64,000 bases of DNA from Schmidtea polychroa (Eukaryota), in NCBI GenBank assembly GCA_044892525.1, contig CM097885.1, positions 19,654,001 to 19,718,000 on the forward strand, in the 5' to 3' direction. Under the pieces are notes generated by a model. The model saw only the letters and a program-made list of their open reading frames with translations. It did not search any database and was not told the DNA's origin. The translations under genes and the position numbers were made by a program. Of the stretch, positions 2-41,862 are shown piece by piece (position 1 is the stretch's first letter; each line of letters opens with the position of its first letter).

Positions 2-982
2 ACGACCAATAACACAAATATAAAATCAGCATTCCAAATCGCCTCTGGAAATTATTCCCAATATTCAGAGATCAAAATAATAAACGCCTTTAGGTATTTA
101 GCGTTTTTCTATACGAATCTGTTGCTCAGTTGTTTGATTGCTGCCATAATAATAGGATTTCTCAACTCTGTCATTCAATCATTTTTGATTTTGAGGAATT
201 ATCGCCTCCATTTTCAGAAAATAAGCAAAAAAGGATTTTCATCAATTATTGCACTGAGAAAGGCTCCAGGTAGCTCTGGACTGATATCTGGCTTCGTAAG
301 GTATAGCGGATATCAAGCTGCCTACATATTGTGGGGAATAATAGTTGTCATATTCTTTATGTTTTTATTTTTGTTCTTTTTGATTGGGGTCATCTTACTG
401 CCTCTGATATTTTTGGAAAACTCTTGGGTGAGGACATCCTTTTTACGTTCATTGCCCGTAATTTTTGGATCAATCTTTATTGCAGCGTTCCAAGCTATTG
501 TTGTTAGATTTGTATTTGTAAAAGAAAGAGGAACCCTAATGGAAATCAACAACCGAAGAGCATTCATGATTTATGCACATTGTGCCTTCTTTCTCAATGT
601 GATGATGGGATTTTTCAATTCAATAAAGCGAATGATTATGTCGATATTCAATTTTGTGTTTTGTTTCTCTAGAATTGACTTTAATACTTTGCCAATCTAT
701 TTGCAAGGGCTAGACAGCGGTTACATGAGCTATATTGGGTTCCTCTATACCCTGCAGTACCATCAAAATCCTATCATGAAATGCTTTGTTGATATTTTGG
801 TAGAAAACCATAAGAGAAGAAAGTCTATCTCGAACCATTCTGATAAAAATCTGAATCACAAAAATGCGATCGAGAGAAAATATCGGGTCAAATGGCATAT
901 GGCGTTGACATTGATCAATAACCCTCAACTTCAATCCAATCGAAAAAAGTTGGATATTATATTAATATCTAGAACTTTATAA
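2..982 (+). CDS. STRA6-like multi-pass membrane receptor, paralogue 1 (5'-partial, intronless)
   Basis: Frame is open from base 2 (TTNNTNIKSAFQIASGNYS...). STRA6-family motifs: FVRYSGYQAAYILWG (cf. FSAYQTAFICLG), INNRRAFMIY (cf. LTNRRVLY), LDSGYMSY, HQNPIMKCF, KWHMALTLINNPQL (cf. RWGLAYTLLHNPTL). Confidence 0.85.
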   Translation, partial: TTNNTNIKSAFQIASGNYSQYSEIKIINAFRYLAFFYTNLLLSCLIAAIIIGFLNSVIQSFLILRNYRLHFQKISKKGFSSIIALRKAPGSSGLISGFVRYSGYQAAYILWGIIVVIFFMFLFLFFLIGVILLPLIFLENSWVRTSFLRSLPVIFGSIFIAAFQAIVVRFVFVKERGTLMEINNRRAFMIYAHCAFFLNVMMGFFNSIKRMIMSIFNFVFCFSRIDFNTLPIYLQGLDSGYMSYIGFLYTLQYHQNPIMKCFVDILVENHKRRKSISNHSDKNLNHKNAIERKYRVKWHMALTLINNPQLQSNRKKLDIILISRTL

Positions 983-1326
983 AGAGTTATGAAATTGGGT
1001 TATTTTTTATTATTCTTTTGAATTAAATTTTAATTGGTATTCCCAATCTTATCATTTCTATCTAATGTAAGGATCAAATTTTTGATTCATTACAGACGGT
1101 GGCCATTCCTTTGACCATTCCTTCTCGTATTTTGAGAACTGTCAGTTTTTTTAATTTTCATGTAAGTCTTCCAGGTGTAGGTAGTAAGAAAATTTGAAAA
1201 GTTCCTTCATGTTTTATATCGTGTTTCTTTGAAAAAAAAACTCTGGCTTATATTAAGCTTTGGTTCAAAATACACATTAGGGCTTCTTTTCGGGTAATGT
1301 CTTACTTTTCATATAAAACCAAATAG

Positions 1327-1708
1327 TCATTCAAACACATTCATATCATCTTCGTCTGGAACATCACTAAATCCCATCAAACATCGAACTCTGCCCTAAA
1401 TTTCTTGCTTTTCTATTTGCTGTAGAATTATTGGTCCTAATCTTTCATGTACCGCAACATAATTCCCTTTAATTGAGCACTACTAATCAGTATAGCCTGC
1501 TCGTAGTGCATTTGCAATACAAATGACCTTGGTTTTATCTAAAAGATTCTTTGCCCAATTCACAACTTCCTATAGGCCAGGCTTCATGAAATTGCCACAT
1601 GCATTTCTTTTCATTCTCTTCTTACAGTCATTGAATTCAATGTACAAATGATCCTTGAAAGACTTTTTTATTGCCAAGTCCAGAGTCTGGAAATAGATAG
1701 TCATTCCT
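1327..1708 (-). mobile_element. pogo/Tigger-type DDE transposase C-terminal remnant
   Basis: Minus-strand translation with one frameshift and a stop: GMTIYFQTLDLAIKK.FKDHLYIEF...GNFMKPGL*EVVNWAK...NALRAGY, matching the pogo DDE_1 C-terminus. Confidence 0.6.
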
Positions 1709-2011
1709 GTTAACAAATTAACATGATAGCAATATTAATTTTGTGTAAATAATCGTAACATTTTGATGATAATATTTAAAAATTTATTGTGATTATCTTT
1801 GTAAATGGGCAATTTTATCAATAGATTCATATCATTATATTATTATAAATAATAATAATAATTTATTAAAAAGAGTGAAGACTATAAATCAGTAATATCG
1901 ATGTTTTTGATATATTACTGACTCATAGACTTCAAGCTCTTTTTAATAAATTCAAGGGAAAAAAATTAGTGGTGAAATTGAAAAAAAAGTTCTTATAACA
2001 ATAATAATAAT

Positions 2012-39611: not shown

Positions 39612-39723
39612 ACAGATACGCCCCGACAGATACACACTAACAGATACGCCAACAGATACGCCCCGACAGATAAACCCCGACTGATACACACTGAAAGATG
39701 CACACCAACAGATACGCCCGATA
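39612..39723. repeat. Minisatellite of 12-15 bp CAGATACGCCCCGA-like units, 100 bp upstream of STRA6-like paralogue 4
   Basis: About 8 degenerate units (cagatacgccccga, cagatacacactaa, cagatacgccaa...). Confidence 0.8.
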
Positions 39724-39822
39724 GTGCACACATTCACAATGTCAATTTATGGTTGGTGAATAAATTGTAAGCGTTTTTATTATTATTTAAATCCTTAACA
39801 TTGAAATGGACTCTCTGTAAAC

Positions 39823-41862
39823 ATGAACCTTTCTGATTTTCAGTTCACCAGCTCATTGGAAGCTCCTGTTTATTTATTAACTGCTTTAAACGAATTGTAT
39901 GGAATATTTCAAAATGTTTCTACCACTTATAGTGAAGACGGACACTTAGTTGAAAATGGTATAAAACTGAATTGTAGTCGAAAGTCTCCAGCCACAGAAT
40001 ATGCTGAATATGCCATTGGTACATATTATGTTATTTGTATTATTATATTCTCCATGATGGTCAAACGAGTATCTTATAGACGGAATCAGTGTAACGGCAA
40101 GCCAGGACTTGTATTGCCAATGAACATGTTAAACAGTCACAATTACATTGTCGAATATACGTTGATTTTTCTCTCTCTATCCGAAGAAATTTACGCCTAC
40201 ATTTTCGGATCGAAAGTAGAAGTTGGTCAATTAATTCCAATTGTTAAATTTTTTATTAAACTAATTATTGTTATCGTATTTTCAATTCTTTCTTATCCAA
40301 TTTTTGCCGCCATTACAAGTTGCCATTTGTTCGGCTATATTACTGTTATGCTGGCGTCAGTTGCTACTTTTTTTGTCGGGGTTTCAGCAACATATACCTA
40401 TTGTTTCTGTTTAGTTGGCGTAAAAATCGTTCCGTTTTTATTTGCAGCCGTCCTCTACAGTTCGATTGATATATCTATTATTGGAATGTTTGTTTGGAAA
40501 ACTTTTTGTCACATACGAGAAAACGGATTTAGAAATCGGGAATTAAACTGCAAATTGTCACCAGATAAGGAAAATTCGAAAATTTATGTTAGAAAATTGT
40601 TGAATGAAAATTTAGACTTGAAGTCATTGAAAACAGAAAATCCGACAGAAGAAAAAGAAGAAGAATTGAAATTTATTGTCAGCCATTTTAAATGCGACGA
40701 ATTGAAAAGTAAAATGAAAGAAAAGATTTATAGACCGATTCCTGGATTCCGGTTACCACCACGATTGATGATTGGGATGTTTGTGGGGTTGTATTTTGCC
40801 TATAGGATTTTCATAGACAATATTTTGGGGCTGACTCCAATCGCGTGGAAGCTGCTAGATGTAATTAATAAAAAATATTTAACTACACAAACAAATATTA
40901 GTCGATCTTTTTACTTAATTTGGAGCAACTATTCTCTTTATTCAAAGTTGGAAATGCAAAATTCCTTTCGATATCTAACTTTCTCTTACACTCATCTTTT
41001 GATTTCCTGTCTTCTTGCAGCAATTTTTATCGCATTTATTAATTCCATTATTCAGTCCTTATTACTGTTGAGAAATTACCGACTTCATTTTCATCGAATA
41101 ACGAGAAAGGGGTTCTCAACTTTCATGGACATCAAACAGGCCCCTCCTCCCTACAGTTTAGTACTCGGATATGTTCGATTCAGTGGTTATCAGGCAGCGT
41201 ATACTTTATGGGGAATTTTAGTCGTGACGTTTTTTATGTTTATAGTTCTTTTTATTGTAATTGGTATAGTTCTGTGGCCTTTATTTTATATTGAAAATTC
41301 TTGGCCTAGGACACTTCTGATTAACTATGGTCCGGTATTAGTCGTGACGATTATTTTTAATATTATTCAATCAATGATTGTGAAATATTTATTTATCATG
41401 GAGAAAGGAACGATTATGGAAGTGAACAATCGAAGATCATTTATAATTTATACGCATTGTGCATTTTTTCTAAATGCTATGATGGGAATTTTCAATTCTG
41501 TCAAACGTGTCATCATCTGGGTATTTTCTGGAGTGTTTTGCTTTTCTAGAATAGATTTTAGTTCTTTGCCTGAATACTTGCACGGATTCGACAGTGGATA
41601 CATGGCATATGTAGGATTTGTTTACACAGAACAATATCATTTTAATCCTATTTTACTATGCTTTACGGATCTTCTTGTGGAAACGAAAAAAGAAAAATAT
41701 ATTAATACAAATGAAGATCAACTCGACTTATTAAATAATGACAAAGGACGCACGAGGTTTAGAAATTTGTGGCGTGTCGCTGTTACTTTAATAAACAATC
41801 ACCAGTTGTTATTAGAGAGGAAAAATATTTTGAAAAATAATGTTGTTTGTGATGGAGAATGA
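39823..41862 (+). CDS. STRA6-like membrane receptor, paralogue 4 (679 aa, intronless)
   Basis: CNGKPGLVLPMN, YVRKLL, YVRFSGYQAAYTLWG, VNNRRSF, FDSGYMAY, HFNPILLCF, LWRVAVTLINNHQL. Confidence 0.88.
   Translation: MNLSDFQFTSSLEAPVYLLTALNELYGIFQNVSTTYSEDGHLVENGIKLNCSRKSPATEYAEYAIGTYYVICIIIFSMMVKRVSYRRNQCNGKPGLVLPMNMLNSHNYIVEYTLIFLSLSEEIYAYIFGSKVEVGQLIPIVKFFIKLIIVIVFSILSYPIFAAITSCHLFGYITVMLASVATFFVGVSATYTYCFCLVGVKIVPFLFAAVLYSSIDISIIGMFVWKTFCHIRENGFRNRELNCKLSPDKENSKIYVRKLLNENLDLKSLKTENPTEEKEEELKFIVSHFKCDELKSKMKEKIYRPIPGFRLPPRLMIGMFVGLYFAYRIFIDNILGLTPIAWKLLDVINKKYLTTQTNISRSFYLIWSNYSLYSKLEMQNSFRYLTFSYTHLLISCLLAAIFIAFINSIIQSLLLLRNYRLHFHRITRKGFSTFMDIKQAPPPYSLVLGYVRFSGYQAAYTLWGILVVTFFMFIVLFIVIGIVLWPLFYIENSWPRTLLINYGPVLVVTIIFNIIQSMIVKYLFIMEKGTIMEVNNRRSFIIYTHCAFFLNAMMGIFNSVKRVIIWVFSGVFCFSRIDFSSLPEYLHGFDSGYMAYVGFVYTEQYHFNPILLCFTDLLVETKKEKYINTNEDQLDLLNNDKGRTRFRNLWRVAVTLINNHQLLLERKNILKNNVVCDGE

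What the first reader, a model, noticed from the sequence alone, without database searches (positions are those of the whole stretch)
2..41862. Cluster of four intact, intronless, diverged STRA6-like receptors in a region of decayed transposons
Seen: four ORFs (three complete at 653-679 aa) share STRA6 motifs and have no stops, while nearly every neighbouring gene or transposase is broken; this implies selection keeps them. Known: vertebrate STRA6 is a multi-exon RBP4/retinol receptor-channel with bound calmodulin, and RBP4 is a vertebrate ligand. Inference: an invertebrate expansion of this family may bind other lipophilic ligands or carrier proteins, i.e. an uncharacterised uptake or sensing system.
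Basis: partly seen in the sequence, partly recalled or inferred. Interest (0 to 1): 0.75.

Follow-up and report, generated by a model that had tools for sequence, protein, structure and literature searches.

The report
Tandem STRA6-like receptor genes in planarian
A flatworm genome holds ten intact, single-exon relatives of the vertebrate vitamin-A uptake receptor STRA6, nine of them in one 200-kb array; selection keeps them, their membrane core is kept alike by gene conversion, and their outer N-terminal halves differ strongly, but what they carry or sense is untested.

Summary
The window has three complete ORFs (653, 659 and 679 aa) and the 3' part of a fourth. All match Pfam RBP_receptor (STRA6) over nearly the full model, and none touches an assembly gap. 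The genome has more: nine intact single-ORF copies in C1:19.60-19.80 Mb, one diverged intact copy on C4, and two decayed remnants. The animal is a dugesiid planarian; the species was not determined.

An AlphaFold model matches only zebrafish STRA6 (5SY1) in the PDB. The inter-subunit Arg-Asp salt bridge and the C-terminal calmodulin-binding helix motif are conserved. A homodimer prediction passes its controls.

dN/dS is 0.3-0.5, significantly below 1. New here: in the five closest copies the 3' half (TM6-9, dimer core) is homogenised, while the 5' half (N-terminus, TM1-5) is saturated at silent sites. This points to gene conversion.

The family is already auto-annotated in molluscs, hemichordates, cnidarians and sponges, and amphioxus has four Stra6l genes. 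So this is a lineage-specific expansion of a known family, not a new system. The scan's only other note on these genes (s1-196436) is this same stretch.

The parts
2..982 (+). 3' 327 codons plus stop of STRA6-like copy L002. The full 651-aa gene starts 974 bp before the window, at C1:19,653,027.
   Evidence: PF14752 E 8e-51 over profile positions 317-605; full ORF in L002:1348-3300
4589..6550 (-). Complete single-exon STRA6-like gene of 653 aa (= L004). This copy was modelled and used for residue numbering.
   Evidence: PF14752 E 4e-70, profile 8-605. AF2 pLDDT 86, pTM 0.83. The only PDB fold hit is 5sy1_A, TM 0.67/0.74. Homodimer score 0.41 against best control 0.00.
18044..20023 (+). Complete single-exon STRA6-like gene of 659 aa (= L006). 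It is the most diverged member of the array and takes no part in the gene conversion.
   Evidence: PF14752 E 6e-63; 36-39% aa identity to the other array copies; third-position identity about 0.35-0.42 in both halves
39823..41862 (+). Complete single-exon STRA6-like gene of 679 aa (= L007). It has two near-copies outside the window: L008 at C1:19.734 Mb and L009 at C1:19.800 Mb, 96-98% aa identity.
   Evidence: PF14752 E 4e-60; dS 0.03-0.05 and dN/dS 0.33-0.45 among the three
39282..41976 (+). Gene-sized unit shared with L009 at 94% identity. L008 shares only 39783-41935, at 97%. Similarity drops to background outside the unit.
   Evidence: DNA search of the own genome; 50-column identity profile and alignments
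41885..41890 (+). AATAAA 25 nt after the stop codon of L007, kept in L008 and L009. The L007/L008 similarity ends about 35 nt further on. This is the likely polyadenylation signal.
   Evidence: Alignment A4; motif offsets. Its use as a signal is inferred.
39587..39732 (+). GC-rich 14-nt minisatellite 90-235 nt upstream of the L007 start codon. It is shared with L009, partly with L008, and absent upstream of the other copies.
   Evidence: the repeat finder family D1; motif counts
27433..35254 (.). Left arm of a local 7.8-kb inverted duplication (context). L007 lies in the 15.3-kb spacer between the arms.
   Evidence: Inverted pairs I1-I15, 94-100% complementary; the only full-length second copy in the genome is the right arm
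50545..58206 (.). Right arm of the same inverted duplication (context).

Best explanation
This is a lineage-specific expansion of the STRA6/RBP_receptor family in a dugesiid planarian. There are ten intact single-exon genes. Nine sit in a 200-kb array that is old at its base and still turning over at its tips.

Shown here: each copy encodes the complete STRA6 architecture. This comprises an extracellular glycosylatable N-terminus, TM1-5, a cytosolic loop, TM6-9, an intramembrane helix, a juxtamembrane loop and a C-terminal amphipathic helix. The family's key core residues are conserved, all copies are under purifying selection, and the five closest copies exchange their 3' halves by gene conversion while their 5' halves stay far apart.

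Inferred: the proteins work like STRA6. They would be calmodulin-associated homodimers, possibly also heterodimers, whose C-terminal core passes a small lipophilic molecule (a retinoid or another lipid) between an extracellular carrier and the membrane. The diversified N-terminal domain and TM6-7 outer loop would give the paralogues different carrier or ligand preferences, or different regulation. Each copy has unrelated flanks, which would give it its own expression pattern.

The single-exon state is derived, because most relatives have many exons. It dates from before the array formed, most simply from one retrocopy that was then duplicated at the DNA level.
For: Family and fold:
- PF14752 matches over nearly the full model.
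- A profile of the copies hits zebrafish STRA6 5sy1_A at E 1.6e-82 over residues 40-632.
- The AF2 model (pLDDT 86) has 5sy1_A as its only significant PDB match, E 2e-16, TM 0.67/0.74.

Core residues:
- Zebrafish R511 and D539, the inter-protomer salt bridge whose loss causes Matthew-Wood syndrome (PMC5954442), align with R538 and D566. D566 is invariant in 93 family members and R538 is kept in at least 90%.
- The predicted homodimer of residues 285-653 scores 0.41 against a best control of 0.00. Its runs agree in at least 90% of contacts and the partner pLDDT is 65. That mark was reached by 21 of 30 proteins solved as pairs and by 0 of 23 solved as single chains. The model places R538 against D566 of the other subunit.
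- The calmodulin-binding peptide 5k8q_B matches the C-terminal helix, and the R..W.lA.TL..N..L...R motif is kept from sponge to planarian.

Topology: N-x-S/T sequons occur in the N-terminus and the TM6-7 loop of all ten copies and almost nowhere in the predicted cytosolic parts.

Selection:
- dN/dS is 0.3-0.5 for unsaturated pairs.
- Non-synonymous changes are significantly under-represented, p 0.003 to 1e-12.
- A pseudogene and a fragment elsewhere show what unselected copies look like.

Age: a protein from another species (P0001, 46% identity) nests inside the array clade, above L006.

Mosaic evolution:
- In L001-L005, dS is 1.3-2.9 over residues 1-287 but 0.13-0.5 over much of residues 288-582.
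- L001 and L003 are 99% identical in nucleotides over alignment columns 400-500 and 56-62% identical in the 5' half. Their third-position identity is 0.92 against 0.51.
- Tree topology differs between the halves.
- Identical runs exceed permutations at p <= 0.0005 in 5 of 10 pairs.
- Predicted interface residues are 78% identical across the seven array types, against 61% for the rest of the C-half and 37% for the N-half.

Derived intron loss: the Glandiceps, Aplysia and Pecten homologues span 12-26 kb, whereas all ten copies here are single ORFs.
Against: - No ligand, carrier, calmodulin binding or transport was tested.
- Expression is not shown. No run holding the stretch is on record as RNA.
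- The dimer pass may reflect the model's memory of 5SY1.
- dS is saturated in the 5' half, so selection there is poorly measured.
- The high N-terminal divergence could be relaxed constraint rather than functional diversification.
- No poly(A) remnant or target-site duplication supports a retrocopy origin.
Confidence: 0.6

Rival explanations
1. Same job, different places. All copies carry out one conserved function, for example retinoid uptake for photoreceptor chromophore supply. They would differ only in where, when or how much they are expressed (subfunctionalisation or dosage). The N-terminal divergence would then be relaxed constraint on a less critical domain, not a change in specificity.
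For: The flanks and upstream regions of the different copies are unrelated. The transport and dimer core is the conserved part. The genome has a carotenoid oxygenase (RPE65/BCO family) gene at C1:26.01-26.06 Mb, so retinoids can probably be made. Omega in the N-terminal regions is still below 1.
Against: Ten retained copies with 14-62% identity over 287 residues is a lot for pure regulatory subfunctionalisation. The extracellular loop, where dS is not saturated, shows one of the highest omega values (0.59). Conversion stops short of the 5' half in most pairs, which fits selection against homogenising it.
Confidence: 0.25
2. A sensing rather than transporting family. The STRA6 scaffold would have been recruited as a surface receptor array for environmental, dietary or pheromonal lipophilic cues. 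The N-terminal domain would act as the sensor, with signalling through calmodulin or other partners, in the manner of chemoreceptor arrays.
For: Single-exon genes in a tandem array, fast-evolving outward-facing parts, gene conversion and birth-and-death (pseudogene, near-identical young copies) are typical of chemosensory and immune receptor families. The STRA6 structure authors are cited as suggesting that the N-terminal domain may sense unidentified ligands (PMC5954442).
Against: There is no evidence for sensory-cell expression. Ten genes is a small repertoire. The translocation core, including the salt bridge that stabilises the retinol site, is the most conserved part, which argues that transport is still the selected activity.
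Confidence: 0.1
3. Not host genes in use: the copies would be recent retro-pseudogenes or cargo of a mobile element that merely have not yet decayed.
For: The copies have no introns. The region is rich in transposon remains. L007-L009 share only a gene-sized unit. L007 lies between 7.8-kb inverted arms.
Against: Copies with saturated silent divergence are all still open, at a chance of about 1e-23 each. dN/dS is significantly below 1, even among the youngest trio. No terminal inverted repeats, LTRs, target-site duplications or poly(A) tails bound the shared unit. All copies but one are confined to a single 200-kb locus rather than dispersed. A truly decayed copy exists for comparison.
Confidence: 0.03

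Closest known systems
Zebrafish/vertebrate STRA6 (PDB 5SY1), the RBP4 receptor and retinol channel bound to calmodulin
   Same: Full-length homology (E 1.6e-82) and the same fold (TM 0.67/0.74). The inter-protomer Arg-Asp salt bridge, the intramembrane helix and juxtamembrane loop, and the C-terminal calmodulin-binding helix motif are conserved. The predicted dimer uses the same elements.
   Different: Only 17-22% identity. The copies are not orthologous, because the planarian clade is separate in the tree. The TM6-7 outer loop, which binds RBP in vertebrates, has a clade-specific sequence with glycosylation sequons and cannot be aligned. The genes are single-exon instead of about 20 exons (exon count from general knowledge). 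There are ten copies instead of one.
STRA6L/RBPR2 and the 'STRA6-like' genes annotated in invertebrates (amphioxus Stra6l x4, molluscs, hemichordates, cnidarians, sponges)
   Same: Same Pfam family and length class. Small lineage-specific multiplications are already known: four copies in amphioxus (PMC3184775), and two or more each in Ptychodera, Saccoglossus and Lymnaea. Physella acuta also has a single-exon copy. None has a tested function.
   Different: This is a larger, tightly clustered array (nine copies in 200 kb), all single-exon, with mosaic concerted evolution. The planarian clade and its nearest relatives (P0109, P0149, of unknown species) sit on a long branch apart from the mollusc copies. 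I found no paper that mentions STRA6-family genes of flatworms. Platynereis was reported to lack STRA6 (PMC5821490).
Tandem single-exon receptor arrays that evolve by birth-and-death plus gene conversion, such as vertebrate odorant receptor clusters (comparison from general knowledge)
   Same: Genomic behaviour: single-exon coding regions, tandem clustering, young near-identical copies beside old ones, pseudogenes, and conversion tracts with a variable outward-facing part.
   Different: The protein fold and presumed activity are unrelated, and the repertoire is far smaller. The comparison concerns evolutionary mode only.

Membership tests
Pfam PF14752 RBP_receptor (STRA6/STRA6L family) | Full-length match to the family profile above the gathering score | tested here: met
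   204-261 bits against a cut-off of 25 for the nine array copies, over profile positions 3-21 to 604-605 of 605. The C4 copy scores 110 bits over positions 15-535.
Pfam PF14752 RBP_receptor (STRA6/STRA6L family) | STRA6 fold: nine TM helices, an intramembrane helix and C-terminal cytosolic helices | tested here: met
   AF2 model of the 4589-6550 copy has pLDDT 86 and pTM 0.83. Foldseek against the PDB gives only 5sy1_A below E 0.001 (E 2e-16, TM 0.67/0.74).
Pfam PF14752 RBP_receptor (STRA6/STRA6L family) | Conserved inter-protomer salt bridge between the intramembrane helix and the juxtamembrane loop (zebrafish R511-D539') | tested here: met
   R538 and D566 align with it. The Asp is invariant in 93 sequences and the Arg is kept in at least 90%. 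The C4 copy has Lys at the Arg position. The two residues contact each other across subunits in the predicted dimer.
Pfam PF14752 RBP_receptor (STRA6/STRA6L family) | Homodimer through TM8/TM9, the intramembrane helix and the juxtamembrane loop | tested here: met
   This is a prediction only. Score 0.41 against best control 0.00, with three runs agreeing in at least 90% of contacts and partner pLDDT 65. The interface residues are 435-443, 508-513 and 531-582. The pass may come from memory of 5SY1.
Pfam PF14752 RBP_receptor (STRA6/STRA6L family) | Calmodulin bound to the C-terminal helix (CaMBP2) | tested here: inconclusive
   The sequence motif is conserved in all ten copies, and the profile matches the CaM-bound peptide 5k8q_B at E 0.0035. 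Binding itself was not tested, because no intron-free calmodulin sequence was at hand for a complex prediction.
Vertebrate STRA6 proper (RBP4 receptor orthologue) | Orthology to vertebrate STRA6 in a family tree | tested here: not met
   All ten copies plus P0001 form one clade (SH-aLRT 97). Their sisters are P0109 and P0149, apart from the vertebrate STRA6 clade (P0064, P0093, P0098) and the STRA6L clade (P0025 group).
Vertebrate STRA6 proper (RBP4 receptor orthologue) | Conserved RBP-binding motif in the extracellular loop between TM6 and TM7 | tested here: not met
   The loop has a planarian-specific sequence that cannot be aligned with the vertebrate loop. The exact critical vertebrate residues are known to me only from memory and were not checked one by one.
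Vertebrate STRA6 proper (RBP4 receptor orthologue) | An RBP4-type lipocalin ligand in the same genome | tested here: inconclusive
   There is no Lipocalin_2 match. There are two weak exon-level matches to PF00061, a family that also covers cytosolic FABPs. A six-frame search of short exons is insensitive.
Processed retrogene (RNA-mediated copy) | No introns, although relatives have many exons | tested here: met
   All ten copies are single ORFs. The Glandiceps, Aplysia and Pecten homologues span 12-26 kb.
Processed retrogene (RNA-mediated copy) | Poly(A) remnant, target-site duplication, and a multi-exon parent gene in the genome | tested here: not met
   There is no A-run at the 3' boundary of the L007-L009 unit and there are no flanking direct repeats. 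No multi-exon family member was found in the genome. An old retrocopy origin remains possible but has left no trace.

The most novel reading that the evidence does not exclude
The array would encode a combinatorial receptor set. Gene conversion and selection keep the dimerisation and translocation core interchangeable, so that paralogues can heterodimerise. Their strongly diverged N-terminal domains and outer loops would recognise different extracellular carriers or lipophilic cues. That would give planarians a private, STRA6-based lipid or retinoid uptake-and-sensing system with no vertebrate-type RBP4.
Probability: 0.15. Interest if true: 0.7.

Novelty: new member of a known kind. Interest (0 to 1): 0.4.

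Why it matters
STRA6 is studied almost only as the vertebrate RBP4 receptor, and what the family does in animals without RBP4 is unknown. Planarians are an experimentally tractable system with RNAi, in situ hybridisation and single-cell atlases. They now offer ten selected paralogues whose conserved core and variable N-terminal half are cleanly separated by evolution. This gives a natural domain-swap series for asking which part of a STRA6-type protein sets ligand or carrier specificity. It also allows a test of whether retinoid or other lipid transport in a lophotrochozoan uses this family, which bears on the open question of how retinoid transport evolved before RBP4. For genome biology it is a clear small example of partial concerted evolution within a single-exon membrane-protein array.

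Tried and rejected
1. Expression by reads. The look-up of sequencing runs failed twice, then listed 12 runs, none on record as RNA. Four runs from 2024, of 286-638 million letters and unknown kind, hold 70-86% of the words of window:4400-6700. Expression is therefore undecided.

2. Exact-protein look-ups of the window copies in the assembly collection found nothing. One search used a wrong minus-strand reference.

3. A slip to note. Alignments A2 and A3 and the AF2 model used window:4589-6547:-, which lacks Met1. 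Residue numbers printed for them are therefore the true number minus 1. The dimer job and the scripts used the correct protein.

4. The word-based homologue search with the C4 copy found nothing. That copy is too diverged for this tool, although the HMM and the tree place it in the family.

5. Mobile-element cargo or a classical retrocopy for the L007-L009 unit: no TIR, LTR, TSD or poly(A) was found. Rejected as far as it could be tested.

6. A large segmental duplication as the source of L007-L009: rejected, because similarity is confined to 2.2-2.7 kb. Whether the unit was copied recently or homogenised by conversion is left open.

7. Shared promoter motifs among all copies: none seen in 150-600 nt upstream.

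8. Species identification. Mitochondrial HSP70 is 92% identical to Dugesia japonica and about 83% to schistosomes. The genome has four very large contigs and about 30% GC. Together these point to a dugesiid planarian, probably Schmidtea, but the species was not established.

9. Lipocalin carrier search: inconclusive.

Full report
**What is there.** The window is AT-rich, about 30% GC. It holds three complete long ORFs at 4589-6550 (-), 18044-20023 (+) and 39823-41862 (+), and an open frame 2-982 (+) that runs off the window start. All four match Pfam PF14752 (RBP_receptor, the STRA6 family) at E 4e-70 to 8e-51. The complete ORFs cover essentially the whole 605-position profile in one frame, so the coding sequences have no introns. 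None of the five N gaps lies inside a gene. The gaps affect only intergenic distances. Given the base composition, a 650-codon open frame has a chance probability near 1e-23. The surrounding ORFs with any family match are fragments: an IS1595-type DDE transposase, hAT pieces, a PolB piece and a CstF77/Suf piece.

**The full family.** A search of the whole 781-Mb assembly with the Pfam profile and with one protein finds nine intact single-ORF copies between C1:19,601,263 and 19,802,097. These are called L001-L009 here, and the window holds L002 (in part), L004, L006 and L007. There is also one intact but very diverged copy on C4:31.75 Mb (L010, 22-23% identity). A pseudogene with at least eight stops lies at C1:22.50 Mb, and a short fragment lies on C4:19.75 Mb.

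**The organism.** The genome's mitochondrial HSP70 is 92% identical to that of Dugesia japonica and about 83% to those of schistosomes and molluscs. The assembly has four very large contigs. The animal is a dugesiid planarian, probably a Schmidtea, but the species was not established.

**Family membership and architecture.**
- A profile of the copies matches zebrafish STRA6 (5sy1_A) at E 1.6e-82 over residues 40-632. It also matches the calmodulin-bound STRA6 peptide 5k8q_B at E 0.0035.
- An AlphaFold2 model of the 4589-6550 copy, built with a 93-sequence alignment, has mean pLDDT 86 and pTM 0.83. Its only PDB match below E 0.001 is 5sy1_A (E 2e-16, TM 0.67/0.74).
- By the alignment, zebrafish R511 and D539 correspond to R538 and D566 here. 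These two residues form the inter-protomer salt bridge that holds the juxtamembrane loop to the intramembrane helix, and its loss in human STRA6 causes Matthew-Wood syndrome (PMC5954442). The Asp is invariant, and the Arg nearly so, across 93 family members from sponge to vertebrate.
- A homodimer prediction for residues 285-653 scores 0.41 against 0.00 for the best of three controls. The runs agree in at least 90% of contacts and the partner pLDDT is 65. The mark was reached by 21 of 30 proteins solved as pairs and by 0 of 23 solved as single chains. The interface is TM8 (435-443), 508-513 and the intramembrane helix and juxtamembrane loop (531-582), with R538 touching D566 of the other subunit. 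Because 5SY1 is solved, this pass may reflect memory. It shows likeness, not binding.
- The C-terminal R..W.lA.TL..N..L...R motif of the calmodulin-binding helix is kept in all ten copies.
- N-glycosylation sequons occur in the N-terminus and in the TM6-7 loop of every copy and hardly anywhere in the predicted cytosolic parts. This fits the STRA6 topology.

**Relation to known members.**
- An exhaustive profile search finds 1,929 cluster representatives.
- The named ones include "stimulated by retinoic acid gene 6 protein-like" proteins of hemichordates, molluscs, cnidarians and a sponge, as well as vertebrate STRA6 and STRA6L.
- In a 141-sequence tree, the ten planarian copies and one protein from another species (P0001, from a Logan contig, 46% identity) form one clade (SH-aLRT 97). 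Two unnamed sequences (P0109, P0149) are their sisters. The clade lies apart from both vertebrate clades.
- The genes are therefore family members but not STRA6 orthologues.
- The extracellular TM6-7 loop, where vertebrate STRA6 binds RBP, has its own sequence in planarians and cannot be aligned with the vertebrate loop.
- Amphioxus was reported to have four Stra6l genes and no STRA6, RBP4 or TTR (PMC3184775). Platynereis was reported to lack STRA6 altogether (PMC5821490).
- I found no paper that mentions this family in flatworms.

**Intron loss.** The Glandiceps, Aplysia and Pecten homologues span 12, 26 and 19 kb. A Physella acuta copy is a single exon. Single-exon copies therefore arise now and then in this family. 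In the planarian all ten, including the unlinked C4 copy, are single-exon, so the loss predates the array. No poly(A) remnant, target-site duplication or multi-exon parent survives. A retrocopy origin is thus the simplest inference, not a demonstrated fact.

**Selection.**
- Nei-Gojobori dN/dS is 0.30-0.52 for all pairs with unsaturated dS.
- Non-synonymous differences are significantly fewer than neutral expectation. This holds even in the youngest trio (L007-L009: p 0.003-0.006) and strongly in older pairs (p 2.5e-6 and 1e-12).
- P0001 nests inside the array clade, above L006. The main array lineages therefore predate the split from that species and have been kept since.

**Mosaic evolution (new here).**
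- Among the five closest copies (L001-L005), silent divergence is not uniform. Pooled dS is 1.3-2.9 for the N-terminus, TM1-5 and the cytosolic loop. It is 0.13-0.5 for TM6, the TM7 extension, TM8, the intramembrane helix and the juxtamembrane loop.
- L001 and L003 are 56-62% identical in nucleotides in the 5' half and 99% identical over alignment columns 400-500. Their third-codon-position identity is 0.51 against 0.92.
- Amino-acid identity is 37-62% over residues 1-287 and 71-88% over residues 288-612. The tree topologies of the two halves differ: (L001,L002),L003 against (L001,L003),L002.
- Runs of identity at polymorphic sites exceed 2,000 permutations (p <= 0.0005) in five of ten pairs.
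- L006 and L007-L009 are saturated everywhere and take no part.
- This is gene conversion or recombination that homogenises the transport and dimer core. Either it does not reach the N-terminal domain or it is selected against there.
- The predicted dimer interface is the most conserved class of sites: 78% pairwise identity across the seven array types, against 61% for the rest of the C-half and 37% for the N-half.
- Where dS is not saturated, omega is highest in the extracellular TM6-7 loop (0.59) and in the linker before the calmodulin helix (0.61).

**The youngest copies.** L007 (in the window), L008 and L009 are 96-98% identical in protein. They share only a gene-sized unit: window 39282-41976 with L009 and 39783-41935 with L008. 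Similarity falls to background within about 35-90 nt after an AATAAA that lies 25 nt past the stop. The copies are 40 and 66 kb apart in unrelated sequence. Either the transcription unit alone was copied, or three older copies were recently homogenised by conversion. The data do not decide between these. Upstream regions of the different paralogue groups are unrelated, so the copies probably have separate regulation.

**How it most likely works.**
- Shown: complete, selected STRA6-type proteins with a conserved core.
- Inferred from the family: dimeric, calmodulin-associated membrane proteins whose core passes a small lipophilic molecule between an extracellular carrier and the bilayer.
- Inferred from the mosaic pattern: the paralogues differ mainly in the N-terminal domain and the outer loop. 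The N-terminal domain is the part that the STRA6 structure authors are cited as proposing might sense unidentified ligands or help recruit RBP (PMC5954442). The paralogues therefore probably differ in carrier or ligand preference, or in regulation.
- The genome has a carotenoid oxygenase gene, so retinoids are a plausible cargo. An RBP4-type carrier was not found, but the search is insensitive.
- The rival readings are regulatory subfunctionalisation only, a sensing array, and unused retrocopies or mobile-element cargo. They are weighed in their own sections, and the last is essentially excluded.

**What could not be done.** Expression is untested. Four 2024 runs of unknown kind hold 70-86% of the gene's words, which neither shows nor excludes transcription. 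Calmodulin binding, ligand and carrier are untested.

**Verdict.** This is a real, selected, lineage-specific expansion of a known but functionally unexplored family, with an instructive pattern of partial concerted evolution. It is a new member of a known kind and of moderate interest.

Noticed in passing
window 27433-35254 and 50545-58206: A local inverted duplication with arms of about 7.8 kb, 94-100% complementary, separated by 15.3 kb that contains the STRA6-like gene L007. The arms are composites of repeats found at 77-86% identity elsewhere (many at C2:183-187 Mb). The full-length pair exists only here. The right arm overlaps the stretch that another note of this scan reads as a Polinton shell (49260-61093).
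   Followed up: partly
window 44495-46670: A GC-rich (0.46) repeat with at least 40 copies at 92-97% identity spread over C1-C4 and small contigs. It is a young, high-copy mobile element. Its ORFs (44932-45546, 45599-46003) match no Pfam family.
   Followed up: partly
window 49589-50182: A 197-aa ORF matches the phospholipase A2-like domain PF08398 (E 1.7e-7), a domain typical of parvovirus-type capsid proteins. It lies just left of the right inverted arm.
   Followed up: no
window 27879-28157 (mirror copy near 57469-57762): A 92-aa ORF matches 46 positions of the CstF77/Suf family (E 5.5e-12). It looks like a captured or duplicated exon of a host mRNA 3'-processing gene and is present in both inverted arms.
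   Followed up: no
window 12323-16072: Remains of a hAT-superfamily transposase split over several frames: a 462-aa ORF with DUF4371, a 267-aa ORF with no match, and a 92-aa ORF with the hAT dimerisation domain.
   Followed up: no
G000 C1:22,503,173-22,504,285 and C4:19,746,248-19,746,546: Decayed STRA6-like remnants outside the array. The first covers residues 199-601 at 39-49% identity with at least eight stops. The second covers about 100 residues. They show birth-and-death in the family.
   Followed up: partly
L013 (Physella acuta JAPYMB010000808.1): The snail's STRA6-like gene is a single exon lying on the opposite strand within the span of a 2-hydroxyacid dehydrogenase gene. This is an independent example of an intron-free copy in this family.
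   Followed up: no
G000 C1:25.0-25.6 Mb, C1:21.49 Mb and C1:270.8 Mb: Several near-identical HSP70 genes have the same two-exon pattern (profile positions 1-64 and 59-599) in pairs of opposite orientation. This suggests recent inverted segmental duplications of a cytosolic HSP70 locus.
   Followed up: no
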